This document shows positions 25,740 through 50,990 of a stretch of DNA of 64,000 bases, piece by piece (the first letter of the stretch is position 1; each line of letters begins with the position of its first letter). Source of the DNA: Ascidiella aspersa (taxonomy: Eukaryota); contig OZ004613.1 of the NCBI GenBank assembly GCA_963924565.1, positions 23,126,001-23,190,000 on the forward strand, written 5' to 3'. A model generated the notes under the pieces. It worked only from the letters and a program-made list of their open reading frames with translations, was not told where the DNA came from and searched no databases. A program made the position numbers and the translations under genes.

Positions 25740-26611
25740 TTTCTAAATCCAGATAGTTTCCATCCGAAACACATCTTCAGATCAATAGTCTACAGTCAAG
25801 CACTACGATACATCCGGATCTGTTCCGAAACCGAAGACAGAGCAGCACAACTAAAAAAGCTTGCATTGACGTTTGAGAATTTGAATTATAGAAAAAACTT
25901 AGTGCAAAGCCAGATCACCAAAGCCAGGATGAGCAACAGAGAAGACCTCCTGACGCCCACAACCAAAAAGGACAACAACCGGACCCCCATAGTTCTAACG
26001 TACAATCCGCGGCTCCAACACCTGAACCGCATAATCGCCGACCTGCAGCCAATACTGGATAACAATCCTAAAACCGCTTCGATATTTCCTTTAAAGCCAC
26101 TTATAAGTTATCGGCAACCGCGCAACATGCGCAACATAGTCGTCTCCAGCAAATTTAAAGACGAAAAGCAAAACTTTGGTACCCTGCCCTGCGGGAAAAG
26201 TCGTTGTGAACTGTGCTCACATATCAATAGAAGTCACATCATTGAAGGACCGAACGGCAGCAGCGTTGAAGTCGGCGGCAATTACAACTGCGATACCACC
26301 AATGCGGTTTACGCAATCACATGCGTAAAATGTCCCCGAACCATATACATTGGAGAAACTGGACAAACAATCAGAAAGCGCATGAATGGACATAAAAGTG
26401 ACATAAAGCATGGACATATGGAGAAACCGGTCGGCGAACATTTTAACCAAGGATCACACAGTGTAAAAGACCTTAGAGTTTCGGTGATCAAAAAAGTAAG
26501 TAACGGCACCCAAGCGAGGCTCACAGTCGAACAAAACATAATAAAAAAGTTCGATGCCATTAATGTGGGGCTCAATCGGATTTGGGCTTTATGTCACACT
26601 ACACCTCATAG
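25740..26611 (+). pseudogene. Truncated PLE ORF with a probable 1-nt deletion near 26578
   Basis: No RT catalytic core. Restoring one G gives GLNRDLGFMSHYTS*, a PLE-like C-terminus, in place of the hydrophobic read-through of ORF 25866..26900. Confidence 0.8.
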
Positions 26612-26786
26612 CAGGCTGTACTACACCCATCGTACCTTGAAGCGCAGGCATCGTAGCATAATTGTTTTTGCGTCAGTAACACGCTTTTGCGAGCATGTGC
26701 CTGTGGATATGTTAGACGTCACCATTCTTATCGCCTTTTACTTGCGCCTGTGCTTTTACGTGCATTTTAATTGTTTTCATTTATAC

Positions 26787-26826
26787 TTTGACCTGATGAA
26801 GCACGGTTGTGCGAAAGCTTGTCGAG
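26787..26826 (+). ncRNA. Minimal type I hammerhead ribozyme in the PLE pLTR
   Basis: TTTGAC-CTGATGA-A-GCAC(GGTT)GTGC-GAAA-GCTT-GTCGAG: intact core, 4-bp stem II, palindromic short stem III (AAGCTT), stem I TTGAC/GTCGA. Confidence 0.85.
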
Positions 26827-27125
26827 AATCAAATACAATTTGTCTTTATACAGTGCCACCTGATTTCTCTGTTTCTAACAAGGTATTCGTTAACATTTGA
26901 TGCCATGATGGTTGATGCAAACACATTGCGTATGAAAGACACACACACATATGTGTTTAATAACAACTGTGATCTAGCCCCTCGGAAGCTGCTTTATGAC
27001 CAACGTTTACGGCTTCCGTATCAATAGTCCGTATCAAACTGATGATCCCCCAATGTGTAGTTGCTTGTACTAACAGAATGTGCAAGTATTGGCGTATGGT
27101 TGTTTCTCGACTCGCTCCTCTCTGA

Positions 27126-32260: not shown

Positions 32261-32877
32261 TGGTACTTCACATTTTTGGATTCTTTCTCGCAAGCTTAGA
32301 AACAGTAAAGTGTATTTATAACGATGGCTCCCTCTCAGCTGCAGTTTTAGACTGAAGACAGTTCTTTAAGCGAAAGTCTTCGCTATTGTGCTGTACCGTA
32401 AACATTTGAATTGGCCAGAGCTAGAATAGTTTATTATTTTATGACAGAAGAAACGGGCTTTTGTTACAACAGCTTATTGAATATAAGTTAAAAGTTCTTT
32501 ACGATGGGCATGCTCTCTGTTTATTTGAGTACTGTGCCCCTACGTTTCTTAAATATAGTTATAAGTTTGTCACATAAATATCCTTGACAAAATTTCCATA
32601 TATTCCCAATAGGCAAGCCATAAAATTAGCATTATAAAACGGGGCAATCGCTAAAAGATGCACAAAATGTTACGCGTTCCATTTACATTTTTGTGTGCTT
32701 TTAACGGGAAAGCGACATCCTAAACTGTCATTGAATCTGCCCGCGTTACAACCGTTTCTAAAAACACAATATCAGAAAAAAAATCTATGTATATATATAT
32801 ATACGGTAAAGTCGGTGCATATCGTGAGTTATAGTTACTAATAAGTATGTGTCGTGTTTTTTCAGCGTCCGTTCAAT

Positions 32878-32997
32878 ATGAGAGTTTGTTGGTTGCTAGC
32901 GTTGCTTTGCTTTAGTTGCGCAACAGCATTGGACACGAACGTTCTGGATGAATACGACCTCGAAGTTCAGGATGACGCGTCTATCGAGGATGAGTTG
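32878..32997 (+). CDS. PHEX-like coding exon 1: signal peptide [17 protein letters not shown] plus start of acidic region ([23 protein letters not shown])
   Basis: Acceptor ttttttcag ends at 32865, ATG at 32878, donor gtaagt at 32998. Phase 0 matches the next exon. Confidence 0.8.
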
Positions 32998-35900
32998 GTA
33001 AGTCTTTGGTAAGACGAGTTCGTAAATCGACATTTGTCTGCAACATGTATAATACTATAAACCAGAGGTGGGCAAAATTTTCTAGTCGCGGGCCAAAACC
33101 AAACCCAGAAAGGTCTCTGTGGGCCGTTAAATGTTAACTGTATAGACTTAACGCATCTTATTATAACCGCAAAGACAATAGATCAGGGATAAAACCAGGG
33201 TATTCTGCTATTTACACTCGATAGACGAACGAAATTTACGCAAAGCGCAAAACAGATTTGCTTTTTCGTAGTTAAATAGCAAAGAATATATGAGGAATGG
33301 TCTCGTTCCCAGTTTGTGAAATAGGGCCGGATAATTTGCGTTGGCGGGCCGTAAGTTTGCGGGCCGTAAGTTTGCGGGCCGTAAGAAACCGTCATCGCGC
33401 AATGATTTTTGACGACGTTAACATTAGTCGAACACGAAGTTATTCGACGTTTTTTTGAGGCAGTACTGACAACATACAGGCCAATGATTGTGAAGTTTTT
33501 TAGCCTGTGGCACACATAGGAAATTAAACAAATTGCGGCTCACTTTCTACAAACCTTTACAATCATAACTTAAAATAACACTTAACACGAAAAGCGATCA
33601 GGTCAATTTACGTTAATATTAATAACAGTAAAATGATGAATAGTGAGCAATAAATCTGGCATGTTTGTCGGCATGCTTAGGCCTATGTGCAACACAAAGA
33701 TTTTTTCATGATCATGTAGGTTTTGCGGTACATTTGAAAAGGTCTCTCGAGGCACACTGAATTCCTGCCATAGGCGCGTAACAGTTTACGGCTCTCCAAT
33801 AACAGTGTATTTATGGAAATGTTTCTTGGATAAAAATCAAAATTTGATTTGGATGAAATATAACTGAACGAGAATTTTATAAAACTCACAATATATTTTT
33901 CAAGTTTTATATGTTTAATACTAATATTCAAGTTAATAAAATTCAACAGATCAATGTGTTCAGGTTACCGATTGTTAGTCATTTAAGTCTCTGCAGTTTA
34001 TAAAGAAGTTTAGAACTTTAGTTAGTTTATTTGTTTAGGGGTAAACTTAAAAACTTAAGGGGTAAACATGCTGAACGATTCCTTTTAAGCTATTCAATGT
34101 ACGCCTTGCGTTGTTAATATATTACCGTATGTCAGATAATTGACTTATGTAGGAAGCTGGCGTTTCCGTTAGTGTGGGTTACCTAGACTCGCCTGCTGGT
34201 TTGCTAACGTCTTACGCCATTGTTTTTTTATAATGAGTAAATTTTTGTTGTAGGGGGCGGAATTGTTCAAAACGTATGACAAAAATAATCCTAAATATTT
34301 TGCATAAATTTTTACCGAAATATGAGTTAAGTACATATTAATTCCACTCAACTTTCTTATTGCTGAATCCTGACAAATAACTGATTATACAAGTCTGGGT
34401 GTGTTGCGCAGCTTAGAGAATCACTTCCACCATCTGTTTCCTTCCCATCAGACAGGCCACTTGTTTGTTTTCCTATAACGACATACTTTATATCTTTCTT
34501 TACACTTTTCAACGCTCTTCACAAACCTTTTGGTAAAATGCTTACTATTTTTAACTACGAAAATGTCGTATATATTCTGTGTTGCGAATAGCTTGAATTG
34601 ATTGTTGTCGATCGACAGAATGCCGAAATGGCGACAATATCGGACGAAGACATGGCCGGTGCCCGTTTGGATACGACGAGCAGCGACGCGGAAGACGTCC
34701 TACTGGACAGCGCCTTATCGGAGGTAGATCAACTCGAACAGCTGCTACACAAACAGCTAAATGACGAAGAAGGTGAAGTGAACAATAGAGAGCAAAAAAA
34801 AGATGATATGGATTTGGAAGATGTGGATCAATCAGACGGAGAACCGGAAGACTTTGGCGGACTTCATTTTATGAAGAAACGGAGTCTCCGCGACTTTTAC
34901 TTAGAAAACGCTATGCGACGGTTCCTGTTGGGACCGCATGGGCACAGCAGTCACGACAACTTTCCTCCAGATATGCAAACAGGTGAGCCTTTTTTCATAC
35001 AAATAACAGCAACATGTCGCGATTGCTTGTGTAAAGCGCATTTTGGTATGTTATAATTCTTGTTATTAGTACAACATATTATTACTTAGCAGTTGTAAAA
35101 TGCGAATCCCATTAATAACACAACATATTTGGAGAGAAATTATGTTTACCAGTACACACAAATAGCTATCTGCTTTAGTAGGATGCCTTACAGGTTATTC
35201 AACCGTGACGTTTGATTGTCCATGTCTGACAAAAATAACTTTTAAATCCGTGGAGTTAAACAGATGACAACTCAAACGAAGAAAATGGCACAAACAAAGT
35301 CTTTGAGCAGACTCTGTCGTACACTACAAGCCAGCGAAACTATGCAACCTATGTAATTACGCAGGCTAACTTGCTCTTACGAAGGTTTCCTTGTACCATA
35401 CTATGGTGATAACTATAACCAGCGATCGCCATTGGGCGTTAAACATCATATTTGTCAAAAGTTTAAGCAACTATTTGTTCCTCAGCCCCTCCAAGAACTA
35501 ACTGCTCAAGCTTCGTAAAACCGACCAAGCACTCAAAATCAACTTGCGGAGTGACCAACACAACCATGCTCGGCTCCATTCACTGGTGCCACGTAACATG
35601 CTCCAAGGGATACAAGTGAGTTTTGATATATGTAAAACACATTCGGTGCGCCACAGCGTACTTAAAAATATTGGCCAACGTGTATTTTGGCGAAGTCATA
35701 TAAAAGTCCTATATGTCGCTAATAGTTTAATTGTTGGCCTTGACAACACTTTTGGTTATTAAGCTCTGATTGGGAGGAAATACAACAATTTTGGAGGGTT
35801 AGTTTTGTTTTTCAAATAAACAAAATGTAAATTAGTCAAAAAACTGTATACCACATATTGTCTCACCGTTACACCTGAATCTCAAAGTATCGTTCTAATT

Positions 35901-38900
35901 ATGTTTGGAAATATCATTGTTAGAAAAACAATATAGGACCTTCATAATTTAGGGAAACTTGTTTCCTAATTTAGGGAAACTTGGACATAGATAATTGTAT
36001 GATAATATGGTCGACAAATTAAATTGACGAACCTATTGTTTAACGCTATTGCTATAATCAGAGTGCAATATGTCGAAGCAGTAATAGGCGCTAAAACAAT
36101 GGTTCCTAAACTGATGGGCTCCGAAGAATGCTTGGGGTCCGTGAGGAAGTTTCAAATATTTATCCACGCAAATACCTTTAAATTCTTTAAAGGATAATTG
36201 CATTAGCTCAAGCACCTGTTTTTGATTAGGTTACATAGGTCATTTAGCAATTTGCATTTTACTTCTAATTTCCAATTAATAAAGTAGGAAGAACACGGAT
36301 TCCTCCTGACCAAAACGTTAGAAAACTAATGTTTTAGTTAAGGTTCTAGTTAATTCGCAAAACACCATAGAAATCGTTTTGTTGGTCAAACTAGGTGAAT
36401 GCCTGCTGGCTTTCGAGTGATATGGAATACTTTACCTATGCATTTTTTGCCAGGCTCAAGCTGACCTTTCCCCAGTACGAGCTTTGCGGCAACGCCACTA
36501 AATTCAGGTGGACCTACGAGCTGAGAGGGCTAACAAAAGGATCCGAAAGATGTATTAAAAAAGGTTGCAATTAATCGATTTTTATGCATGATTGTACTAG
36601 GGCGCTTGAGTGAATACTGTGATCTTTGATTGGAAGCCATAAGGTTCGCCATTTAAGAAGAAAAATAACCTAAAATAACGGAGTACATAATTCAGTTGTT
36701 TGCTCGGTTTAAGTGTTTATTTGTGTATAAATAAACATACAACAATGCATAAATTGTTAGTGTCGAAAGTGGAAACACACAAATCAGCTATTTAAATAAT
36801 TAAAAAAGACTATCGATAACATAACGTGGTATAAATGTTACTTATACCATTTAAAAGCTTACAAATCACTGCTTATACTTTATTTTTCAGCTTATTTAGG
36901 CTTTCATTGTAAATATCCAACATATTTTAAGGTGCTAAAGTGGCGACGAAGAAAAAAAAGACAAGCAAAAGCACTACTGCATCTGTCGCATGCACCACAC
37001 CACAATGTTTTGCGTCAGGTCAGTATATTACATTTTTAATAAAGCATATTGAAGTCTTTCGCATTGATGAAATCCTCGCTTACAACATATCTGTAGAGCT
37101 ATTAAACTGCACTTAAAAATGTAACGCAACTTTCACGGCATTAAAACTAAAGGTAATAATTTAAAAAGCAATCCACCCTGGCAAAATACTGTGATTTATA
37201 CTAAAACAATCGCTTTTACAAAATGCTGGAGTGTATTATGCTGTAACAAACACGCGCCAGGTAACGAACACGTGATGGTCGTGCTATTTGATTTACAATC
37301 GCGGCAACTTTAAACAGAATATGCAAATTCATGGTAAGGTTTTATGTAAATTAAACGCAAAACCTTGACTTATTTTGACAAACTGTTGGGTCTATGTAAA
37401 CAGGTTACCTCTAAATAGCAGTATTTGATTAAATGGATAATTGATACACGCCGCGAATTAATTCGTTTTCCAGTGTGTAGATAATAGATACCAAATAAAC
37501 ATTTATGTCAAGATAAACGCGATACATTCGGTATGAATCGCCATTTCGTATACTTTCAAAAGTGTTCGTATGTTTTCCCATTCACTGACTTAGATTTTTA
37601 ATTTTGTTTTGTATAGCACGCTGCTTACGGCTATAGTTTAAACCAAATGGGATGATTTAAAGTTTTGGGGAAAATTTGTTTAACAGTTATTAGCAGTTCA
37701 GCCAACATGTACATTAACTTATTCGAGTTACACATGCCTCTAAATCTTGTAATTGAAATGCAGTAAATAGCCAATTTCTACTTTAGGGCGTTTAAAGATT
37801 TACTATACGGTCAGCATATTAGCAAAGCGATATACTTTCCATCCCTCTATTCAATGTCATGCCCAACAAAAATGGAAGATGAAACACGTACCAATAGATT
37901 TCGATTAGTACATTTCCTTTCGTTTTATGTCTTTGTTTTTTGTTTCTTGATCTAAAATGCAATCAGACACGCTTTAGGTATATAAATAAATGAAGGCACC
38001 GTTAAGGCCTGCAACACCACAACTGTTTCGAAAAAAACATAAACCCAATTATTTTGCAGTTAAATCGATATGCTTGGCCCATAGCAACCCAGCGGATAAC
38101 AACGTTAAAAAAAGTGTCGTTCACAAATGATTTAACTGCGACTGCCGAAACGCCGTTTTAAATTACTTTGAAGGCTGCACCATGAAAGCAGTTTGTGTGT
38201 ATAACTTTTTAATTTTACATATTTTGCTGTTTGAGCATAGTTATGACATCTATCGGATCGGATCGCGATCCTTTTGTTCCTAAATATATTTTTGGTCCAA
38301 ATTAGAAAAGCTAAATCTATTCATTGCGTTTAAGTCAGTCCCATTGCGCAAGTCTGTATAGGGCAAGCGTTAGTAGGCCGGATTCTTAATGTTTAGTGTT
38401 TTCCTGTCACACACAGCCGCCTACTACATGAACAAGATCGACTTCAAGGTGAACCCGTGTGACGACTTTTACGAGTTCGCATGTGGCCGCTGGCTCAAGG
38501 AAACGCCCATCCCACCGTCCAAGAGCAAGTTCCTTACCTACACCACGATCAGAGACCGCGTTGCTCGTAACATGGCAGGTAGGTTGTGCCGGGTTTTGGT
38601 GTATTTGATTTTGTTTGCATAATGACTAAAGTCTCAGTTAAGTTTGCTGATGAGCGTGATCAATAACAAATTATAAATATTTTATACCCTTATTATAATA
38701 AACTCTTCTGTTTTTCTGGGCCATTTAGAAACTTTAAATCCTTGTAGTAACTTGATGTCCTTATACGTTTTGAGTTCTTAATACTTTCCTATCATAACGC
38801 ATTTCTTGATATATTTGTAGTGCTATAAAACATAAAAAATGGAAAAAAACAACTATGACATTCTAATTCATTGTTTTTTAGTGTTTTCAAAAGGTGTCAA

Positions 38901-41900
38901 AATTTCAACCACTGTCTTTTTAGCAGTCTCAAAACTCATATTTGAACACCATTACAATGCTATTCGTTACCTATAGAGTTATTAGTGTCCAATCCTAAAC
39001 TCTTTTAACATTTCAACCTGTATATATATCTTAATTAATGCCTATGGAACTAAAAAGCCTTCGCTTTTTTCAGACTTGCTAAACAAACCCTACGTGAAGA
39101 CCGAATGTGAAGCAGTGAAAAAGGCAAAAATTGTCTACAAGGCTTGCATAAATACAGGTACGTAAGATTTAAAAATACTAAACTACGGTTATAAATAAAA
39201 AGTTCCACAACAAAACCAAAGGTTCCTTTTGGGCCGCGACGACTTAAATTGGTTATAATCCTTTTAAACCAACCAGGTGTGTTTAGGCAGGGCTAGCATT
39301 CAGCGTTTACTTCTAAGATTTGTGCTTGTTTTTAAGTATAGTCATGAGAAAATATTGATGTACTTATTTCTAAGAAACGAGCATCATTTTGAGGTGTGTT
39401 GTTTTTGTCTAAATTTTGTGTGTTTGTTTTGTTTCATACTTCCGTTTTAAAGTAGCTATTGTATACATCAGGTCATCAGGTGGTTTTATACGCAAAGCTA
39501 TACGCGCCAAGTCACAATACTGTAAAGTATTAATTGCTACAGGTTATAAGAATGTTTTTTAATAAATAGGTCTCTTTAACGTGAGTAGAAACAAGTTTTT
39601 CGCTGGAACAGGATAATAAAATTATTCCACACGTATAATTAAAGTGGTTCAATTGTTTGTTTTTTGCAACATGAATACCCTAATATTGTTTTTTTCGAAA
39701 TAGAAGTGTTTTATGTATTCCGAACTGAACTATATAGCTACTTTGTTGCACGTGGTTTCCCAAGAATCGCATTGGAAACTTGCAGTAAATAGCTATACGA
39801 GTGGTAAACTATTGTATACGGATCAGAGTGTAGTGTGGGTAATTTTTGGTCTGAGCAGATGGTAACCCTGCTTCAGGTCCGTTTGATCAGATTAATGCAA
39901 CTATACGTCTGCTTTTTAATTAGAACTGATCGACGAGTTAGACGCGAATCCGCTCCACATGCTTCTCAAGGACGAGTTGCAGTGGCCAATCATCAGCCCG
40001 GACTGGGACCCGAAAGACTTTTTCCTGGAGAAGACACTTGCAACACTGAGAGGAAGATTTAACAACCAGGTCCTCTTCAAAACGGTGGTAAGGAAGACCA
40101 ACGGAAACCACGTGCTACAGGTAAATTAACCCCAGGACTTTGTGATTCTCGGGCGAATCAATTGTTCGATTGAAGCAAACATTACACAAAGGTTTCGTAT
40201 TACATGTAATATAGGTTGACACACAAATATTCACACAGTTAATCGTTGCTTTTCTTCCTATGTCGATTTTGTGGCTTTAAGTCCGCAATAAACCATATCG
40301 ATTTTATTCTTTAATTCTGTATCGGTAAAAACATGGGTCAAATTAAAATAATAAAATTCTGAAGTAAAATACATTAAACCTTTCCATAGTGGCAGTTCGT
40401 TTTTTTGTAAAGATTTACCTAATGCTAAACTATACCCAGGCCTCCTAAATCATATTGAAATTTTCCAATTTTTCAATTGATCTATTATCTTTTTAGAGAA
40501 GCACTATTTTACGTTGTTTGTGTGGCATTTCGTTTATTTTATAAGTTGCCACAGTTTCAAACAGTGCATTGCTATTAAGCCAAACAACCTGTCCAAAAAA
40601 AAAAACACTCGGCAGCTGTAATGTTCGTAGGTGGTCGTGTTGCTTCAACCGGAGTTTATATATTTAGTTTGCAACAGCGACTTGTATTGTTTTTGCAGAC
40701 CTGGAAAGGAAAGCTGGCTCTTCCGTTCGCCTACTATAAGGAGCCGCGCTACGAAAAGGTAAGTCGGAGGGTAAATATATGCTTATGGCCGCTATCAACA
40801 CAAAGTAGATTCCCCACCTCTCTCTTTTTATACAACGGGAATGCGAACAGTGCTAAGACGAGATAGTCATAAACAGTGACAACTCGAAAGGACACTAACA
40901 CAATTGTAGACTCAGCTGATAAATATGACGAAATGATATGCTATACTTAGAAATATATGCAAATTTATTTGTAGAGACATGCAACATTCCCCAAAATACA
41001 TACTATTATCATGCAGCTTTTAATAGCGTCATAATTTTAAGTGCCCCAAACTCGGCAATACTGAAAATAGTAGCACGAAAAGTTGAAAATTACAGAGCTA
41101 TCCACCTTTTTCACAAAATGCAATGAACTACCGGCAAATAATTTTATTATCTGGTATAAGAGCACAGTGCTTTACTGTAAACAAACCTACACTAGCCTAT
41201 TTTTGATGGATGTTTTTAGGTATAGGCAGCGTAAAAGTAAACTAATAAGCAAGCAAATAGCAAACTACTAATAAAGTCACTAAAAAAATGAAATAATATT
41301 GTAGTCTCGTGCCCTTTTTATATTTGGATAAAAAAACCCTATAGGGGCGTGACTGCAACTAAGAACCATTCGTTTAGACGCGTTAAAAGCCTATAGGTAA
41401 ATTCAAAACTTATTTAAACGCAAACCAGCACACCTTTTCGGTTTAGATCTTTGGTTGACTAAACTACACAAACATAATGCTTCTGCATGCAAAAACAAAT
41501 GGCCTTCAAAAGAGCCGCATAAACCCTTTGTTTTCTAGAAACTGGACGCCTATTACGATTTGCTGTACGACGTTGCTATGATGATGGGCGGCAACCACGA
41601 TAGAGTCAACTCGGACATCGGCGACTTGAGACAATTTGAGAGGAAGCTCGCCGACTACAAGCTCGACGACTGGGATTACTTCTCTCCGTTGACCATCAAC
41701 CAACTGCAGTTTCAAGTACCCAACGTAAGAGAACCATCGCTGAATGATTTGTTTCACACTTAATAAAGTGTAGCAACGTCGCAAACCATTGGGATTGGAA
41801 GAACACCGAACAGTAGTACTCTAGGTCTAACAAAAAGGTGGTATTGGTGCTGATGCGATTCCAAACTAATCACACATTTAATATTTGGTTTCCAATCGAA

Positions 41901-44900
41901 TTTAGTACGTAAAATCAATAAATCTCTTTTAATAGTTGTCCAAAATAATACGTCTATGTTTATGTACCAATTAGAAAGATGAATAGAAACTAATTTGAGG
42001 TTTTATATAACAGATTAAAGATAATGTTCCTCTATAAAGATATTTTATCTGACTATATAAATCTTTCTCTTAGGGGTTACAGCCTCCTAATTCCTCCCTT
42101 CATAAAAACTTCATCCCAATTTTGTTGCTATAGTTGCTCATTCGAACTGAAGAGTTTGTTTCTCGCTTACTTGCTGTATATCATACATATATTTTCGTAA
42201 GGCTTTATAATTGCGCTTGCCAAATTGGTTAGGCCTGCGCAGCAAATGGTTGAATCGCAGATTTTAAACACACTTTCTATCGGCCTTACCAAACCCCGTT
42301 CTTATAATGACCCGTTTTTGTTTCTAGATCAACTGGTTATATTTGTTCAAAACCATGATACATTCGCACCCAATCACGAAATCGACCAAAATACAAGTGT
42401 GGAATGTAAATTACTTGAACGATCTCATAAACCTCATCCAGCGAACCAAAAAAAGGTAAAAACGTGATTTCGAATTTGCAAAAAAAATGCAAAATCCAAG
42501 CTTAAATTATTCGACTTTTTATAACTTAAAACGATCGAGTAAACTTTGAAAAGTAAATGCAATTGAGCTGTGAAATACGAAATCCTCTGAAAAATGAGTT
42601 ACAACTTAACCTATCGGTTCCCATATATGATTAAATTAATGATAATCGGGTTATAACATATCATGTAATTTTAGTAAATATACATGTAACCTAAAAAAGT
42701 AAATAACATAGGTAAAAATGTTGTGCAAAATAACCTATAGTACAAATTGGTCATTCTTGATCAAAAACAAGTCAAGATCACGTCATTGTTTGTTGCGTTC
42801 CAATCATAAGTAGAACAATGAAAGTTCTAAGTTATTAGCATTGAAATGCAACGATTGAGACTAAAACAAACGATGCATTTCTTCCATCTCCAGCACTGTT
42901 TCACATTGCCACCCTAAATCAAAACAATATAAGCAAGCAAACCGTTTTACGCGAAAAAGTAACCAATACCATTTTTTACCGAAATCGTGTGGATTAAATT
43001 GTAATTCATTTGCCAAATTTATTTCCAGATCAAGTCATGTACTCAACAAACTTAAGTAAATTCCAAGTCTTCCCAAAACAGTATAACCTGTCCTAAATCA
43101 ATAAAAATGTTCCGTTGCTAGAAATAACATCTTCAATTTGTGCTATACTGATCAATTCCTGATTTGCGTCAAGACATATAAATATAAAAACACTAGTATA
43201 GACTTTAAATTTGATTGGTGTAAAAAATAATCTCAGTGCTCTTCCGCGATGTCAATCCAATAAACATAGGCGAATAAGTAGGAAGTAAACGATATGCAAA
43301 CTCTTAAAGTTTTATTTCATTAAATTTTAGAAAATAATCGCAGCTTCGTCATTTGATTTATCACAGGACAGTTCAAAACTACATGATCTGGCGTTTCGTA
43401 AAACACCGCGTCAGAAATCTCAGCAATCGCTTCTCGCAAGCTTATCTGCGGTACGAGGAAAAGATGCTGGGCAAAGAGTCCCTGCCACCAAGGTGGGACA
43501 AGTGCGCTACCCACCTGCTCTATCTGATGAAAGGCGCCACAGGGAAGCTGTTCATCGACAAGTACTTCTCCGCCGCCAAGAAAAAGGCTGTGAGTTCTTG
43601 TAACTGTAAAGTCCGGATTCTAACCCATAAGCCATATGTCTATATGGTATTTTTGGCATGAAATTAATTAATTTAAGGTTTTCGCTGGTCAACACAGAAT
43701 GACCAATTGATGTGTGTTTCCCACTGTTCATTTCCAATATTTACGTTAACGGCATCATAAATTAAAATCATCACAAAAAATTTCTAATAAAATATGCACA
43801 TAATGTAATGCTGGACTGTTTTCAAAATCAGTGTTTAAACATTAATCCTATAAATAATTACGTAGTTCGGAACTATACGTTGCTTATAAACAATATTTAT
43901 CATATAAATAATTAAACCCGTCTTATATCTACCATCTGCAATAATACAGTCCACACGCTATATGCATGTTAACTTACAAATAGAGAGATTGGTTTAAAAT
44001 AGTTCAAATCATTGACAAAGGATAATCAGAACAAGACTGAGTTTAAAACGGAAAGAAAATAAAGTTCGCTTTGGTTGTTTTTCAGGCAAAGGAACTATTC
44101 AACTTCATCCGCAAAGGATTCCTGCATCTTCTCGACTCCGAAGTGACCTGGATGGACAACAAGACGCGCGCCTACGCAAAGCGAAAGGCTCTCGCCATTA
44201 CGTCAGACATCGGCTACAACCCGGCCATCTACAAGAACACAACATATCTAGATCTTGAAGTGAAGCACGTAAGTGCCGACGTTCGTCGTAATTTTCTTAG
44301 TGGTTTGTTGGTCGAAAATGTAAAGAAAATGAGCCAGCATTTTACCAGCTATTATAGCTCATCGCTTTATGGTGAAGGTTCTAACTGATGAAAAGTAGAG
44401 AAAAATAGGTGATTGTGAATATAAAATGTCCCGCCTGTAATAAATAAGGAAAGTGGTTAACTAAAAATATCTATTAGGCTTTACGCAAAACCGTTCAAAA
44501 TAATTTTACTCGTACCATATGAGCTATTTTGGAGCGTGGTTCACCGTCGAGATTTTTAAATTTTGGTTTAATTTTTCACGACTATTTAGCTTGTTGAAAT
44601 GCTAAACAACAGTGTATAGAAGTGAAGCAGATTCTTAAAGGGTTTGAAACATTTACACAATGATAGTTAACTTGACTATTTTAAATGGTTGTGTTTGATA
44701 ACAAGACACATATTCTGCGTGGATTCTTCTCCAGGGCATCGGAAGTTTAGTATAGCGATTATATTGCGATAAAAAAACAAGAAAGATCGGACTAAAATTG
44801 AAATAAATTATATCACTTACAGCTTGAAGTAAGGACGTGGGATTACTTCGGCAACACACTCAACCTGTTGACGACCATCTCTCAAAACAAATTCAAACTG

Positions 44901-47900
44901 CTGGGCGAGCCTTACAACACCACCGTAGATATGTTCACTCAGAGGCCTACCATGGTGAATGCGTTTTACAGTCCAACAAGGAACCGAATCAGTAAGTTTA
45001 TCTAATATTTGCCAGCATTAAAACAATATATAAATAATGCACTTAGTAGAATTCGTAGGTAAAAACACATGTATCATATATGTGTAGTATTTTATCCAAG
45101 AAAAATCACAATAAAAGTCAAGCTTTTCCAACACAACTAGTAGGTATAGAGCGTTTAATCATTCTTAAATTATATATACGCAGGCACGGGCAATCGTGTT
45201 ATTAAAAAAGTTTATAACGAAGATCCATTCGACGACCTTATAACTTGTTCAATGGCCATTAGGGGAGATTTTTATTTTCACAAATATATTACTATATAGT
45301 CTCTGCAATTCTGTGTTAACTTATTAAACTTGTTTTTAGCTCTTCCCGCCGGAGAAATGCAGTATCCGTTTTACTGGGGAGACAAGTTTCCAAGGTTGGT
45401 AAACAATTGTGTTAAACAATGTTTAGTTAAAACGCACTATAGGGTGATTAATATAGAATTGCGTAGAAATCAAATGATGAAAACACACCATGACTTATAG
45501 GCACCTGAAGACGAAAAAGTATTTTTTAAACAGATCAACAAGGGTATTTTTATTATTATATTTGGAATTGACTTGTTGAGCCGATAAGTTGTACTAAAAA
45601 AAAAACATGACATATTTTAATAACTATAACTATTTTATAGTAGATTATATTGATATACACCCTTGCATTTGTAAACCAGGATGTTCCAGTTCGGTGGCAT
45701 CGGTACGATTCTGGGTCACGAGCTTACTCACGGCTTCGACAACACGGGAAGGCAGTACGACCTCAAGGGTAACTTGAACAACTGGTGGACCACCACGTCC
45801 CTCATGCAGTTCAAGAAGCGTACCACGTGCATGGAGGACCAGTACAGCAACTACTACTTCGCAAAGGCAGGGGAACATGTAAGTATAGCGCGGTGTTGAG
45901 CGCAATGCTGTATGTGACTTATGTAAATAACTTCTCGCAGTTAATTACGGCAAAATGACTTGACTTGACTCAGTCTTTTGGTCAAAAATACCTCACGTCA
46001 TTTATATGTCTTTTGAACAAATGACTTGGATTGAAGTAAAATGTTTTCATTGAGCATTTGTTTTCTTAAAGTTGGGTTATTTATCTCATTGCTGCACATA
46101 ATATGTTTTCCTGTTAAATGTTGCGTTTTTTTTATCAGTTGTGTTGTTGCGTATATTTCACGAGTTTACAAAGTTTGTGAATTTTCCATTTAATATTGGT
46201 TAACAAGGACTTGACTAAGAATTAAATTGCTCTAATTATGACATGGCTTGGACTTCATTTGTCACTTATTTAAAAATACTTAACTTGGGTTAAATTAAAA
46301 GTTATTTTAAAAATGACTTTTTGTTTAATAGCTTTCTTTATGGCCTCGCTGTGCGTTTTCCTTTGGTCATAAATCAACCATCTTGAAATTAAAATTAGAA
46401 CCCAGGCCAGCTGGCTTTCAAGAAACTTAAAACAAGTCGAGGTATCCAAATCCATTGTTTTGAAGATATGTAAGGCATGATCGTCGACCTATAGTTGTAT
46501 TTTGCCCAAAATGCTAAATTTGTTCTATACATAAGACGCCCCCCGCCTTTTTAGGCCCAAGGTTAAAATCTGAGTCCGTTTTGACTTGCATTCGCATTAT
46601 CGTATATTTCACGCTAATCTTGGTTTTCAGCTGAAGGGTGTCAAGACGCTGGGTGAAAACATTGCTGACAACGGCGGCATCAGGGAATCATTCGAGGTTT
46701 GGAAATCGATAAAAAAAGAAAAAATCGCTCCAATAAGTAGTTTTAAAATCTCTAAAAAAAACTGTTTGACCTTTTAAAATTGGCAATTTTAAGACATTAA
46801 AACTTTGCAGGTACATAAACGACATAAAACCCCAAGTTGCTTAATGGGCTTTTCAATTGGCAAATAGTAGTCCTATTATTTAAACTAAAACAGACTTTAG
46901 TTCTTTCGAATGTTTTAATTTGAAAATATCCACATTTATTTTATTTGGCAGTTAAAAGCAACAAATACTAAGATGGTAAATAATAATGGCGTTGAAACAT
47001 TCTTTTCTGTAATATTTAATAACTATCGGTTTTAGAATGCGACTTGCCTCGTGGCTCAACGTTTGTTACGTAACAACTGTATTTCCTACCACAATTTTCG
47101 AGAATATAACCATTGCATTACTAACAGATTAACTAACGCATCTTCTACAAAACAGGGTTATCACCTCTGGTTAAAGGCTAGTGGTTTGAAGGGTGAACAG
47201 GTTGAGCCAACAACCGGCCTTACCAACGACCAAATGTTCTTCGTCGGATTTGCGAACGTAAGAAACCTTGTATATTTAACCGCGAGGTGGCAACAACGAG
47301 TTTATATTTTTGATACGTCACCCAAAACATCCAATTGTAAAGATTGTGGAAAATGTGTGCAAGAAACTAGTATATTTGTTTGAAACAACCTGGATAATTG
47401 AATAAATAACTAGTTGCCAGATTACGCTATTTGCAATAAAGCACAATACCAGAGTTCAACGAATGTTAGGCCCAATAGGCCAGGAAACATTGCTAAGAAT
47501 TTCAGAATATACCACTCTTTTTAAAAGATATTTATTATAAAAAAGCAGGCACAAGCGTTATCTTTCTTCCAGGGTATGTCTTGAATAACATTTTGTCACA
47601 GCTTTACACTTTTACTTAACTTGCTGCAACTATTTGTCAATTTGATTCCTATCGAGTCCACGAAACCGCAGCAAAAATTGGTTTACCCTCCTTCGATCGC
47701 GTTTGTGATAAAACCCAATATAGCGTCCTCCCGTTGTTGTCAGATTGCTACGTTATAGAGCAAATTCATTGCCGCAAATTCGCGTGATGCAACAGAATCC
47801 TTCTATAAACACCCGAACTCTGATCCTATACGTTTACGTTAACGGAGCATCAGCTATAGGATGACGGGCTACTGACAGATGAAACGTGATTTTTGGTTGT

Positions 47901-50900
47901 TTTGGCTTGCCGTGTGTCCGCCAATCCGCTGGTGGAATCTAGAGTTTCGCTTTTCGCATATTCAGAAGCACGTTGGCCACATTTCCTGTACAACATTCGG
48001 TTGTTTTCCCCGCTGAAGTAACTCCATCACTCTATCTTCGCTTTCGTGTGGGGTTTGTTTTGAGGTGACCTGATAGCAATCGAGAACTGGTATTCTACCA
48101 GGTATTGAAAACAATTGTTAAAGGGTATTTTTTACACTGCGGCGCTCATCAAAGTTTTGTCAAACAACAACTCACAAATCAATAAATCACAGAAGACTTT
48201 TAAGTATGAAAGAGGTCATTTCAACTTCGAATATTTGAACCATAAATATATTGATATTGATAGATACCTGCCACTTTCACTTCTTCTTTCTTGGCAATCA
48301 CGAAAATGCACAAACGCACATGTCACTAAGGAGCATCCATCGGCTTGGCATGTAAATATGACCGACATCGGGTTTATAAATTACACAAGTGCATTTCCGC
48401 CTTTTTACGCCGTATTTAAAATAGTTTACTACCAAAGCTTCCGTCCAAAACTTTTACATATACTAAGAAAGGATGTCGTGAAGGACCTTTGAAGGCAAAT
48501 ATAACTAATATTGCAAAAATATAAGAGGATATTGTTTTTCAAGTCAGAATGCCAAAATTGCATAGGGGCTGAAAAAAAATCCACCGAAAAAAAACTAACC
48601 GTTTCCGATGATTATCCTAACGAGAACAATATTTGCTTTGCTTAAGCTTGTGGTGCGCCAAAACAAATAAGTATTCTTAAGTTTCGTAGTTTGTTTACTT
48701 AAACCACCCCAAAATTCTAGGTTGTTCGCACAACTTGTCAGAGTGAGATGTATACAAATGTTAGCCCAAAGTATAACGATCTCGCCAAACGACTTTACAC
48801 TAGCCTCGTATGACACACAACTTTGCAACATTGAAGTTTTGTAAAAGAAAGGCAGCGTGCCGCAAATCGCGAAGTCAAGCTCTTCGTTGGCGATGTGACT
48901 TGCGCGAACCTTGGCAAAATAAAGGGCGTTAAACAATAATTGAAGAGTAAACACTAAAATAGAGGAAAGGAAAAAGAACAAAAATAAGGAAAGAGGAAAG
49001 ATGAAGCGAGGCGAAGCAAAGAGCAAAAATAAACAAATCAAATCAAATAAATGCGACCACATAATAATAAACCTGCCCAGACCAACAATTGTAAAACTGG
49101 GTGAAAAGTGAATAATGCTATAGACTTTTGTAAAGTCATCACCCTTCCAGTTTTGCTGAGTCACCACTCGTCCAAACAAACACGTTTGTCGTTTAGGCGT
49201 CGTTTGCGGTGCATTCACAACACACGCCCAGAAAGAGAAAGAACGTCTTGAGGTTACCCTATATTTGTACAAGTGCTGACTCACCCATTACCCATACGGA
49301 GTGCGGCCCGATCTCTAGATTGGCACAAACTAGTAGTTTTTGTCCCCTTTTCAGACGGCGTTCAATTTTTAGCGGTTGGCCTACTGTCAGTGCGTACCAC
49401 GTGGTTTGCAAAACAATTATTTTCTCTGTCAAGAGTTGTATTTATTGAAGTCAAAAATGAATCAAAAAATTCACAACAGCGGTAGCCGCATACCACATTT
49501 TATTGGCCAATTTAATATGGAAAATACAGAATATATAGTAATTACGGCAGCCGCAATCATTTTATACTTACTTAATTTTCTTTTACGTGCTGCTTTAACT
49601 TCGTCGTACCACCTGAAAAATCTTCGTGAACCTTTAGTGGTACGTCTACTACAGGTTTAGAACGGGAGATGTTCGATAATTTCATGACGTCATAAAACAA
49701 GTTGAACAGAAACCTGTTGTTTTTAGTCGAATAAATGTGAAAGTAAAATGGCGTTTAACTAACTTCAAGGAGAAGTCGCCGAGCTTTTTTAAATAAATTC
49801 AACTCTTTTAAAAAAATATTCCCAATATTTAATATACTCAAAACAAATCATTTAGGACATCATGGAACCCTATCTAGTCCACACAAAATTTGTTCTTTTT
49901 GCAGCACAACAGGCTGTATGTTTCTATAAGTTTAGTGCCTTGTGTGGACTGGGGTGTAAAAGTTCTTTATTAGAGTGTGTTTTGTTCCACAAAAAGTTGA
50001 CAAGCACGCTTTGCAAAACCACTGCCCTCAAAGTGTTCTCTTCCTTTGCCAGGTTCGATGCGGCAAATTTACCCATCGAGGGGCGGTACATGAGGTGGCG
50101 AAGGACGTGCACAGCCCAGGCCGATTCAGGTGAGGGTAATTAACAGGCGCTCGCAACGCGATACCGCTAATCTGCTGGATGGTGAGGTTGCCACGTATAG
50201 GGCGGTATGCCCCTGATATGCGCAACATTGTATTCTATTCTGAACTTTACCTGTGAAGAAAGCAGGTAAAGTTGCTGCGCATGAAAAGGTTAAATTTCGT
50301 GCGGGTTCAACATCGTGTAATATAGTGTTGTAAACAGAGTCATTTAAGTCCAAGCCAAGTTTTCTTTTCTTAAATAACAATACAAGTCACGTCATCATTA
50401 CAGCAGGTCAATCCCAAATGAAGTCCTTTGAAAATTGAATATGGACAAATTTACTTATATGGCCAAATTTAGTTACTAAAAAGTAACAGAGACGCAACGT
50501 ATGGCAAGTAATTTGTATTAGGTGCAACAAAGTCTAGACAAGTTATTTAAAAACAATGCCTTAAGTTCAAAATTCATTGACTTAAAGTCATTATAAACCT
50601 GATTATTATACTTTCTTTGGAAAGAAGTAATAAAATCACCTATTTCATGTTTTACTTTTTTGTCACTTTGTGTAAAACGTTTCCTTTTAAAAAATATGTT
50701 ATAACGCTCCGATTAACAAATGTGAATGCTATAATTACCTGTAGATTTACGAAAAATCGGCGGAATGTTTCTAGGTCGAAAATGATGTGAGCTAAAACTA
50801 AGCATGCCTAGCAAAGCTGTTTATTAGCACAAGGTTTTTAAATATATAAGCACAAGGTTTTGTAGCGTATTTTGTTTTGTTCGATTGCAGAGTCATCGGA

Positions 50901-50990
50901 TCTTTGCAAAACTTCGACAAGTTTTCCACTACGTTCAACTGTCCTGCTGATTCGAAAATGAATCCCAAGACTAAGTGTGTCATTTGGTGA
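32878..50990 (+). CDS. PHEX: PHEX-like M13 (neprilysin family) zinc metalloendopeptidase, secreted form with acidic pro-region and Sushi domain; 20 coding exons, 2802 nt, 933 aa
   Basis: Twenty GT-AG-bounded exons join in matching phase into one open frame from ATG to TGA. Motifs: [30 protein letters not shown] (HExxH), [11 protein letters not shown], terminal CVIW. PHEX-type residues: PAGEMQ, QYSNYY, VRC, RWDKC. The symbol means PHEX-like; orthology is untested. Confidence 0.93.
33063..33385 (+). mobile_element. hAT-type MITE, family B, right end replaced by a 15-bp tandem repeat (GCGGGCCGTAAGTTT x~3)
   Basis: The left end CAGAGGTGGGCAA..AGTCGCGGGCCAAAA..CAGAAAGGTCT matches the reverse complement of 16575-16637. 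Confidence 0.7.
34619..34982 (+). CDS. PHEX-like exon 2: acidic region, KKR and RR dibasic sites
   Basis: cag acceptor and gtgagc donor; 364 nt, phase 0-1; lies within ORF 34598..35056. Confidence 0.85.
35486..35615 (+). CDS. PHEX-like exon 3: first half of Sushi/CCP domain ([39 protein letters not shown])
   Basis: ttcctcag acceptor, gtgagt donor, phase 1-2, C-x-V-x-C-x-x-GY pattern. Confidence 0.85.
36454..36563 (+). CDS. PHEX-like exon 4: second half of Sushi/CCP domain ([36 protein letters not shown])
   Basis: ttttttgccag acceptor, weak gttgca donor, phase 2-1, C...W...C pattern. Confidence 0.8.
36932..37018 (+). CDS. PHEX-like exon 5: Lys-rich linker and first M13 cysteines ([28 protein letters not shown])
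   Basis: Phase 1-1, gtcagt donor. CTTPQC is the canonical start of the M13 ectodomain. Confidence 0.88.
38417..38578 (+). CDS. PHEX-like exon 6 ([14 protein letters not shown])
   Basis: 162 nt, phase 1-1, M13 N-terminal signature. Confidence 0.95.
39074..39157 (+). CDS. PHEX-like exon 7 ([16 protein letters not shown])
   Basis: 84 nt, phase 1-1, KAK..Y.xC M13 motif. Confidence 0.93.
39924..40120 (+). CDS. PHEX-like exon 8 ([26 protein letters not shown])
   Basis: 197 nt, phase 1-0, tag acceptor and gtaaat donor. Confidence 0.92.
40699..40758 (+). CDS. PHEX-like exon 9 ([20 protein letters not shown])
   Basis: 60 nt, phase 0-0, ttttgcag acceptor and gtaagt donor. Confidence 0.88.
41539..41724 (+). 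CDS. PHEX-like exon 10 ([21 protein letters not shown])
   Basis: 186 nt, phase 0-0. Confidence 0.92.
42328..42455 (+). CDS. PHEX-like exon 11 ([17 protein letters not shown])
   Basis: 128 nt, phase 0-2. Confidence 0.9.
43367..43589 (+). CDS. PHEX-like exon 12 ([15 protein letters not shown])
   Basis: 223 nt, phase 2-0. Confidence 0.95.
44086..44268 (+). CDS. PHEX-like exon 13 ([17 protein letters not shown])
   Basis: 183 nt, phase 0-0. Confidence 0.95.
44823..44991 (+). CDS. PHEX-like exon 14 ([12 protein letters not shown])
   Basis: 169 nt, phase 0-1, NAFY substrate-binding motif. Confidence 0.95.
45340..45394 (+). CDS. PHEX-like exon 15 ([18 protein letters not shown])
   Basis: 55 nt, phase 1-2. 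Confidence 0.93.
45680..45878 (+). CDS. PHEX-like exon 16, zinc-binding GHELTHGFD
   Basis: 199 nt, phase 2-0; HELTH at 45717-45731. Confidence 0.97.
45910..46310 (-). repeat. Family C copy in PHEX-like intron 16
   Basis: GACTT-rich; its reverse complement aligns to 12518-12864. Confidence 0.62.
46631..46696 (+). CDS. PHEX-like exon 17 ([11 protein letters not shown], third zinc ligand)
   Basis: 66 nt, phase 0-0. Confidence 0.96.
47156..47257 (+). CDS. PHEX-like exon 18 ([14 protein letters not shown])
   Basis: 102 nt, phase 0-0. Confidence 0.93.
50053..50129 (+). CDS. PHEX-like exon 19 ([15 protein letters not shown])
   Basis: 77 nt, phase 0-2, HSP motif. Confidence 0.95.
50891..50990 (+). 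CDS. PHEX-like exon 20, terminal ([32 protein letters not shown])
   Basis: ttgcag acceptor, canonical M13 C-terminus, TGA stop. Candidate AATAAA signals near 51398 and 51530. Confidence 0.96.

What the first reader, a model, noticed from the sequence alone, without database searches (positions are those of the whole stretch)
32878..37018. PHEX-like peptidase rebuilt as a secreted protein: signal peptide, acidic region, Sushi domain, M13
Seen: five phase-compatible exons upstream of the M13 domain encode a short signal peptide (..CATA|LD), ~110 Asp/Glu-rich residues, KKR, a six-Cys Sushi module and a Lys-rich linker. No transmembrane helix is present. Known: PHEX, NEP and ECE are type II membrane proteins with a short cytoplasmic tail and a TM anchor and no accessory domain. 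I know of no described Sushi-M13 architecture. Inference: a soluble, matrix- or ligand-targeted PHEX-type enzyme.
Basis: partly seen in the sequence, partly recalled or inferred. Interest (0 to 1): 0.88.

Follow-up and report, generated by a model that had tools for sequence, protein, structure and literature searches.

The report
Secreted M13 peptidase with orphan N-terminus
An animal neprilysin-family (M13) peptidase gene seems to have swapped its usual membrane anchor for a signal peptide, an acidic stretch and a small cysteine-rich module. The module cannot be shown to be a Sushi domain, secreted M13 enzymes are already known, and no transcript evidence could be obtained.

Summary
The five exons are in the sequence as described. 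All have GT-AG borders, are open, and are phase-compatible (0/1/2/1/1) with the first M13 exon at 38417. They look coding. The proposed frame is the best of six for every exon, and exons 1-4 each beat all 102 open intronic stretches on codon usage. Exon 1 is by far the best of 100 possible first exons and the only one with a hydrophobic start. Exon 5 carries the conserved C-x4-C start of the M13 ectodomain. It has no Met and is closed by a stop just upstream, so it needs an upstream phase-1 exon. A canonical paralogue in the same genome has a membrane-anchor exon in that position, with identical intron phases.

One gene for a secreted, catalytically intact M13 enzyme with a roughly 250-aa extension is therefore the best reading (about 0.6).

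- "Sushi" is not supported: Pfam found nothing exon by exon, a local Sushi profile scored 5 bits, and hhalign gave 15%.
- Exons 2-4 have no relative anywhere searched.
- Signal-peptide M13 enzymes are well documented in Drosophila and mammals.
- "PHEX-type" is untested.
- The exon 4-to-5 junction is the weakest link.

Interest is modest.

The parts
32878..32997 (+). Exon 1: start codon, predicted cleavable signal peptide (about 18 aa, A-T-A|L-D) and the start of the acidic region. Ends in phase 0 at the donor TTG|GTAAGT.
   Evidence: translation, splice sites. (best of 100 candidate first exons and the only hydrophobic one). (codon usage). (KD19 of 1.6 against 2.67 for a true anchor).
34619..34982 (+). 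Exon 2: 121 aa, of which about 85 are strongly acidic, then KKR and a short basic helix. Ends in phase 1 at a strong donor, CAG|GTGAGC.
   Evidence: 28.4 bits, donor 7.7; composition. (AlphaFold2 of this exon alone: helices 19-61 and 90-103, pTM 0.29). (no relative in 1.84 billion representative proteins, the own genome, the PDB or the Atlas).
35486..35615 (+). Exon 3: first half of the six-Cys module (4 Cys, 2 sequons). Phase 1 in, phase 2 out.
   Evidence: 18.4 bits. (single copy in the genome). (no Pfam family).
36454..36563 (+). Exon 4: second half of the six-Cys module (2 Cys, Trp, 1 sequon). Phase 2 in, phase 1 out. The donor is weak. An alternative donor after 36551 keeps the last Cys through a split codon. 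If the exon is read through, the frame stops at 36569-36571.
   Evidence: donor -3.7 bits. (alternative donor). (single copy). (no Pfam family).
36932..37018 (+). Exon 5: Lys-rich linker plus the conserved C-x4-C that opens the M13 ectodomain. It has no Met, and the frame is closed by TAA at 36928-36930. Phase 1 in, phase 1 out.
   Evidence: the own-genome paralogues have the same C-x4-C, the same 17-residue spacing to the Pro-Cys of the next exon, and phase-1 introns on both sides.
38417..38578 (+). Exon 6: start of the Peptidase_M13_N domain (profile positions 1-39).
   Evidence: PF05649, E 7.5e-13. (genome scan hit at the same place). (chained exon).
38417..50990 (+). The rest of the M13 gene, at least 13 exons. 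Motifs present: NAFYSP (44823-44991), HELTH (45680-45878), GENIADNGG (46631-46696), DVHSP (50053-50129), and a terminal exon ending C-V-I-W plus stop (50891-50990).
   Evidence: PF05649 and PF01431 hits on single exons. (ECE-1 and neprilysin structures). (crude chain of 555 aa that skips some exons).

Best explanation
One gene on the + strand, 32878 to about 50990, encodes a catalytically competent M13 (neprilysin/ECE family) zinc endopeptidase that is secreted rather than membrane-anchored.

In the ancestral layout, still present in a paralogue of this genome, a first exon with a cytoplasmic tail and signal-anchor helix ends in phase 1. It joins a short C-x4-C exon. Here that first exon has been replaced by:
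- exon 1, a cleavable signal peptide;
- exon 2, an acidic, largely helical or disordered stretch of about 105 aa, ending in a KKR dibasic site and a short basic helix.

A two-exon, 240-nt, phase 1-1 cassette (exons 3+4) sits in the same phase-1 intron. It encodes a basic, glycosylatable six-Cys module of unknown fold.

Shown:
- The exons are open, phase-compatible and coding-like.
- Exon 5 needs an upstream phase-1 exon.
- No anchor exon exists nearby.
- The catalytic motifs are intact.

Inferred:
- The signal peptide is cleaved and the enzyme acts as a soluble extracellular peptidase.
- The acidic stretch may be a propeptide or charge mask for the basic module, removed at KKR by a proprotein convertase.
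- The Cys module and Lys-rich linker may tether the enzyme to a matrix or cell-surface ligand.
For: - Splice sites, phases and the open frame.
- Codon usage: the proposed frame is the best of six for all five exons. Exons 1-4 score above all 102 open intronic stretches.
- Exon 1 is the top of 100 possible first exons, without using hydrophobicity as a criterion, and is the only one with a hydrophobic N-terminus.
- A crude exon-chaining search keeps exons 2, 3 and 4 in all top chains. Without the 32878-36563 exons the best chain falls from about 52-55 to 14 bits and runs through a transposon ORF.
- Exon 5 has no Met and a stop directly upstream.
- No ATG-started ORF with an anchor-like helix and a usable donor lies between 20000 and 38417.
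- Only 360 nt separate the read-through stop of exon 4 from exon 5. That is too little for a 3' end, a promoter and a first exon.
- The paralogue at C4:15.98 Mb has an anchor exon (130 nt, phase 1), then a 45-nt C-x4-C exon (phase 1-1), then the M13 start, with identical 17-residue spacing.
- M13 domains and catalytic motifs are present.
- No transmembrane-like segment in 825 chained residues.
- Secreted M13 proteins with signal peptides are documented (PMC8223033, PMC2259306).
Against: - There is no transcript evidence.
- The junction that ties the extension to the M13 part is the weakest one: exon 4 donor -3.7 bits, exon 5 acceptor -2.8 bits.
- Exon 4 read through ends in a stop after 3 codons, and an AATAAA lies about 160 nt further on, so a short separate transcript is possible.
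- Exons 2-4 have no homologue in 1.84 billion representative proteins or in the own genome, so conservation cannot support them.
- An out-of-frame ATG at 32847 lies just upstream of the start codon.
- The signal-peptide call rests on hydrophobicity and the -3/-1 rule only.
Confidence: 0.6

Rival explanations
1. There are two transcription units, or a short isoform. Exons 1-4 make a separate small secreted protein of about 245 aa (acidic region plus Cys-rich tail) that ends at the read-through stop at 36569-36571. The M13 enzyme is translated from a transcript with a first exon that was not recognised.
For: - The exon 4 donor and the exon 5 acceptor are weak.
- There is an in-frame stop 3 codons past the donor, with an AATAAA about 160 nt downstream.
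- Exons 2-4 are orphans unrelated to any M13 protein.
Against: - Exon 5 cannot start translation and needs an upstream phase-1 exon.
- Only 360 nt lie between the stop and exon 5, and they hold no usable ATG exon with a targeting signal.
- No other signal or anchor exon lies within 12 kb upstream, so the genes would have to overlap in the same orientation.
- Read-through would give an odd number (7) of Cys.
Confidence: 0.15
2. It is one gene, but the Cys module is not constitutive, or is not real. Exon 2 splices straight to exon 5, giving signal peptide, acidic region, linker and M13.
For: - Exon 2 ends in phase 1 at the strongest donor of the set (7.7 bits), and exon 5 accepts phase 1.
- Exons 3+4 total 240 nt, so skipping them keeps the frame.
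- The chain without them still scores 42 bits against 52-55.
- The open stretches around exons 3 and 4 are only 50 and 59 codons long.
Against: - Exons 3 and 4 each score above all 102 open intronic stretches on codon usage.
- Exon 3 has a good acceptor and donor, and exon 4 a good acceptor (2.6 and 4.9 bits; 4.6 bits).
- Together they give an even number of Cys, three sequons and a Trp, as expected of an extracellular module.
Confidence: 0.15
3. One reading: the six-Cys module is a true, if divergent, Sushi/CCP domain. The gene would then be a Sushi-M13 fusion made by exon shuffling.
For: - The motif T-C-x-x-G-Y-x-L, followed by Cys, then Trp 8 residues later, then a last Cys, resembles the second half of Sushi.
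- That motif is the only part that aligns.
- The module is a phase 1-1 cassette, as shuffled extracellular modules typically are (general knowledge).
- The genome is rich in Sushi exons: 1739 first-look candidates.
Against: - Pfam found no Sushi hit on either exon at E<=10.
- The local Sushi profile gave 5.1 bits, inside the range of shuffled controls.
- hhalign gave 14.6% probability over 11 columns, and the global mode aligned nothing.
- The Cys II-III and III-IV spacings (16 and 20) are longer than in all 30 reference domains (about 12-13).
- There are two extra Cys.
Confidence: 0.25

Closest known systems
Signal-peptide (secreted) M13 proteins of Drosophila: two Nep, 18 Nepl and the secreted Nep4 isoform (PMC8223033)
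   Same: They have the M13 ectodomain with a predicted signal peptide instead of the type II anchor. For Nep4, the alternative 5' exons decide between the anchored and the secreted form.
   Different: The paper does not describe a roughly 250-aa acidic plus Cys-rich extension. Most fly Nepl proteins lack catalytic residues, whereas this gene keeps HExx[13 protein letters not shown] and DVHSP.
Mammalian SEP/NL1/MMEL1 and Drosophila NEP2, the soluble neprilysin-like enzymes (PMC2259306, PMC8223033)
   Same: They are active M13 enzymes released into the extracellular space. A basic processing site lies N-terminal of the ectodomain (for SEP, from general knowledge).
   Different: Those enzymes are made with an anchor and released by cleavage. 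Here no anchor is encoded, and the KKR site lies between the acidic region and a Cys module, not next to a membrane helix.
Canonical type II M13 paralogue of the same genome (G000 C4:15.98 Mb, minus strand)
   Same: It has the same C-x4-C exon, the same 17-residue spacing to the Pro-Cys motif and the same phase-1 introns on both sides of that exon.
   Different: The paralogue's first exon encodes a 13-residue tail plus a 24-residue anchor helix. The window gene has four exons there instead, with a signal peptide.
Sushi/CCP domain (PF00084)
   Same: Shared features are the C-x-x-G-Y-x-L motif, a later Cys-...-Trp-...-Cys, the phase 1-1 cassette and an extracellular setting.
   Different: It fails every profile test run here. 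It also has longer loops and two extra Cys.

Membership tests
Peptidase family M13 (neprilysin/ECE/PHEX) | Peptidase_M13_N (PF05649) and Peptidase_M13 (PF01431) domains | tested here: met
   Exon-wise Pfam hits. PF05649 positions 1-39 (E 7.5e-13), 159-225, 263-339 (E 3.8e-17) and 337-380. PF01431 positions 31-95 (E 6e-20), 86-134 and 172-204.
Peptidase family M13 (neprilysin/ECE/PHEX) | Catalytic motifs: HExxH, the third zinc ligand in ExxxD (GENIADNGG), substrate-binding NAFY/NAYY and the His of DxHSP | tested here: met
   [21 protein letters not shown] and DVHSP are all present in the chained exons.
Peptidase family M13 (neprilysin/ECE/PHEX) | Type II topology, meaning a short cytoplasmic tail plus an uncleaved signal anchor. 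This is typical of the family but not universal. | tested here: not met
   No anchor-like segment. The maximum KD19 is 1.6, at the 16-residue signal-peptide core, against 2.67 in the paralogue's anchor. SignalP and DeepTMHMM were not available.
PHEX subfamily of M13 | Clusters with PHEX rather than NEP, ECE or KELL in a family tree | not tested
   No full-length relatives could be fetched because the exon-sized queries fall outside the length window of the protein search. Against solved structures, one exon matches ECE-1 best (74 against 62 bits) and another neprilysin best (33.5 against 24.8).
Sushi/CCP (PF00084) | A match to the family profile at or above the 20.7-bit cut-off | tested here: not met
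   No hit on exon 3 or exon 4 alone at E<=10. On the joined module, in a script only, an HMM built from 30 own-genome Sushi exons gave 5.1 bits, about rank 19 of 2000 shuffles. hhalign gave 14.6%. The Pfam model itself was not run on the joined module, because that step was left out.
Sushi/CCP (PF00084) | Four Cys paired I-III and II-IV, an invariant Trp between Cys III and IV, and a beta-sandwich fold | tested here: inconclusive
   Six Cys and a Trp are present at roughly compatible positions, but the loops are longer than in all 30 reference domains. The fold and disulfide pairing cannot be tested without a prediction on the joined sequence.
Cleavable N-terminal signal peptide | A basic n-region, a hydrophobic core of 7-16 residues and small residues at -3 and -1 | tested here: met
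   M-R, then 16 uncharged residues, then A-T-A before L-D. This is a heuristic only; no predictor was run.

The most novel reading that the evidence does not exclude
A lineage-specific, domain-shuffled M13 endopeptidase. Its membrane anchor was replaced by a signal peptide and an acidic propeptide that masks a new basic, disulfide-rich targeting module until a convertase cuts at KKR. The result would be an active, matrix- or surface-tethered soluble neprilysin-type enzyme with an accessory domain of a fold not yet linked to this family.
Probability: 0.2. Interest if true: 0.5.

Novelty: new variant of a known kind. Interest (0 to 1): 0.3.

Why it matters
If transcripts confirm the model, this would be an M13 peptidase with an accessory extracellular module and a possible acidic propeptide. 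The M13 papers read here (PMC2259306, PMC8223033) describe no accessory module. It would also be a clean example of anchor-exon replacement and phase-1 module insertion that can be compared with an unmodified paralogue in the same genome.

It does not touch a long-standing open question. Secretion of M13 enzymes is already known. The extension has no recognisable relatives, so nothing about its function can yet be transferred from other proteins.

Tried and rejected
- Homologues of the extension: exon 2 against 1.84 billion representative proteins gave 0 hits. Exons 2, 3 and 4 against the own genome gave only themselves. The PDB gave nothing and the ESM Atlas nothing usable.
- Full-length M13 relatives: the exon 6 ORF in the search for homologous proteins returned one 48-aa fragment. 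Exon-sized queries cannot reach proteins of about 900 aa.
- Earlier scan notes: none near this place and none for the words tried.
- Sushi: rejected as a demonstrated assignment.
- An alternative anchor-bearing first exon between 20000 and 38417: none found. The region between exon 4 and exon 5 holds only a 3-codon ATG exon without a targeting signal (read).
- My crude exon-chaining search over-extends into the upstream Penelope-like ORF at low exon penalties. I treat that as an artefact of the scoring.
- Steps left out on purpose, under the operators' rule on spliced models: no Pfam, InterPro, large-database search, structure prediction or fold search was run on the joined protein or on the joined exon 3+4 module. 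The joined translation was used only inside local scripts.
My chain of the M13 part skips some exons.
Full report
**Setting.** The window is G000:C7:23126001-23190000 of a 308-Mb, 75-contig animal genome. It is AT-rich, with 35-45% G+C. The finding concerns the 5' part of a multi-exon M13 peptidase gene on the + strand.

**Observation.**
- All five intervals have AG/GT borders. The donors are TTG|GTAAGT, CAG|GTGAGC, CAA|GTGAGT, AAG|GTTGCA and CAG|GTCAGT.
- The lengths are 120, 364, 130, 110 and 87 nt, which gives the phases 0, 1, 2, 1, 1.
- The joined frame is open for 270 codons and leaves one base for the acceptor at 38417.

The product starts with M-R and 16 uncharged residues, then A-T-A|L-D. 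Residues 19-125 hold 37 Asp/Glu against 5 Lys/Arg (pI about 4.05). KKR sits at 126-128. Residues 164-242 are basic (pI about 9.8) and hold six Cys and three N-x-S/T sequons. A KKKK linker and C-T-T-P-Q-C follow. The description is therefore accurate.

**Is it more than chance?** I trained a codon table on 38 coding segments found by homology, totalling 6.4 kb. These were 30 Sushi exons and 8 stop-free M13 paralogue exon segments of this genome; the homology-defined M13 exon cores of the window were added, bringing the table to about 8 kb.
- The proposed frame is the best of six for all five exons.
- That test favours open frames by construction. I therefore also compared against 102 stop-free intronic stretches of at least 28 codons. 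Exons 1-4 (0.19-0.24 bits per codon) lie above every one of them (null mean -0.38, maximum 0.11). The Lys-rich exon 5 falls at the 6% tail. Known M13 exons, left out one at a time, score 0.06-0.56.
It is also the only one with a hydrophobic N-terminus, a property the score did not use.
- A crude exon-chaining search used codon score plus generic splice weights. It keeps exons 2, 3 and 4 in all top chains. At low exon penalties it wrongly runs on into an upstream transposon ORF.

**Link to the M13 part.**
- Exon 6 (38417-38578) matches positions 1-39 of Peptidase_M13_N at E 7.5e-13.
- Exon 5 supplies the C-x4-C that precedes this domain. From its second Cys to the Pro-Cys of exon 6 there are 17 residues. 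The spacing is the same in two paralogues of this genome.
- Exon 5 has no Met, and its frame is closed by TAA at 36928-36930. Translation must therefore enter from an upstream exon in phase 1.
- Between 20000 and 38417 there is no ATG-started ORF with an anchor-like helix and a usable donor.
- Only exon 2 (strong donor, 7.7 bits) and exon 4 (either donor) deliver phase 1.
- The paralogue at C4:15.98 Mb shows the ancestral layout. A 130-nt first exon encodes a short tail and a 24-residue anchor and ends in phase 1. A 45-nt C-x4-C exon flanked by phase-1 introns follows, then the M13 start.
- In the window gene the anchor exon is replaced by exons 1-2, which also end in phase 1. Exons 3+4 form a 240-nt phase 1-1 cassette in the same intron. 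This is the pattern expected from exon shuffling (general knowledge), and it makes the model coherent.

**Weak points.**
- The exon 4 donor (-3.7 bits) and the exon 5 acceptor (-2.8 bits) are poor.
- A donor after 36551 is as good, and it keeps the last Cys through a split codon.
- If exon 4 is read through, the frame stops after three codons, and an AATAAA lies about 160 nt downstream. A short transcript ending there cannot be excluded.
- The 360 nt before exon 5 cannot hold a 3' end, a promoter and a first exon with a targeting signal. A fully separate M13 gene would therefore have to overlap the upstream one.
- Exon 2 can also join exon 5 directly, so an isoform without the Cys module is possible.

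**The M13 part.** Single exons hit PF05649 and PF01431 along their whole lengths. [25 protein letters not shown] and the C-terminal C-x-x-W are all present. The enzyme is predicted to be active. The chained product has no anchor-like segment. Against solved structures, one exon matches ECE-1 best and another neprilysin best. 'PHEX-type' remains untested.

**The extension.**
- Exon 2 has no relative in 1.84 billion representative proteins, the own genome, the PDB or the Atlas.
- Exons 3 and 4 are single-copy.
- AlphaFold2 on exon 2 alone gives a long helix (residues 19-61 of the exon, block-mean pLDDT 82-96 over residues 21-50) and a short one (90-103), with no compact fold (pTM 0.29).
- The acidic stretch, the KKR site and the basic module suggest an acidic propeptide that masks a basic module until a convertase cuts at KKR. 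This is inference only.

**Sushi.**
- Pfam finds no family in exon 3 or exon 4.
- Using sequences the tools gave me, I built a profile from 30 high-scoring Sushi exons of this genome. I scored the joined module inside a script. It gave 5.1 bits, about rank 19 of 2000 shuffles, and only T-C-S-K-G-Y-K-L-K aligned.
- hhalign gives 14.6% probability over 11 columns, and nothing in global mode.
- The Cys spacings are longer than in every reference domain.
- The module may be a very divergent CCP (I put this at about 0.25), but it cannot be called one.

**What is known.** M13 enzymes are typically type II membrane proteins, but soluble members exist: SEP/NL1, MMEL2 and NEP2 (PMC2259306). In Drosophila, 2 Nep and 18 Nepl proteins carry a signal peptide instead of an anchor, and Nep4 switches between the two by alternative splicing (PMC8223033). 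Secretion as such is therefore not new. Full-text searches found no paper with both 'Peptidase_M13' and 'Sushi', and nothing describing such an architecture. That is weak evidence of absence.

- Under the operators' rule on spliced models, no search, family scan or structure prediction was run on the joined protein or on the joined exon 3+4 module. Joined translations were used only in local scripts.

**Verdict.**
- The single-gene, secreted-M13 reading is the best one (about 0.6).
- 'Sushi' and 'PHEX' are unsupported.
- If real, this is a new variant of a known kind.
- Interest is about 0.3.

Noticed in passing
window 25866-26897 (+): A 344-codon ORF with a GIY-YIG catalytic domain (PF01541, E 1.2e-7). 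It is probably the endonuclease part of a Penelope-like retroelement, about 6 kb upstream of the M13 gene. My crude exon chaining wrongly attached it to the gene.
   Followed up: partly
window about 33344-33386 (+), intron 1: Three head-to-tail copies of a roughly 15-nt unit (GCGGGCCGTAAGTTT), read.
   Followed up: no
window 48595-49284 (-): A 229-codon ORF on the opposite strand, inside the long M13 intron between 47.3 and 50.0 kb. It has no Pfam family. It could be a degraded mobile element or a chance ORF.
   Followed up: partly
L054 7971-9242 (G000 C4:31.56 Mb, +): Another M13 paralogue appears to start with a single 424-codon exon. It encodes a long Ser/Arg-rich presumed cytoplasmic region, with the anchor helix only at about residue 320. 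This is a second, different N-terminal elaboration in the same family.
   Followed up: no
window 32824-32865 and 32847-32849: Just upstream of the start codon there is a GTGAGT...TTTTTTCAG pair only 42 nt apart. An out-of-frame ATG at 32847 opens a 22-codon uORF that overlaps the start. A TATATATA run lies at about 32790-32806. The 5' UTR structure is unresolved.
   Followed up: no
Joined to exon 5, it rebuilds the sixth Cys from a split codon and drops four residues.
   Followed up: partly
G000 C1:16.64-16.70 Mb, C3:1.18-1.35 Mb, C8:5.47-5.49 and 6.03-6.14 Mb: Very large tandem arrays of single-exon Sushi domains. There were 1739 first-look candidates genome-wide, and all 150 that were scored lie over the Pfam cut-off.
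   Followed up: no
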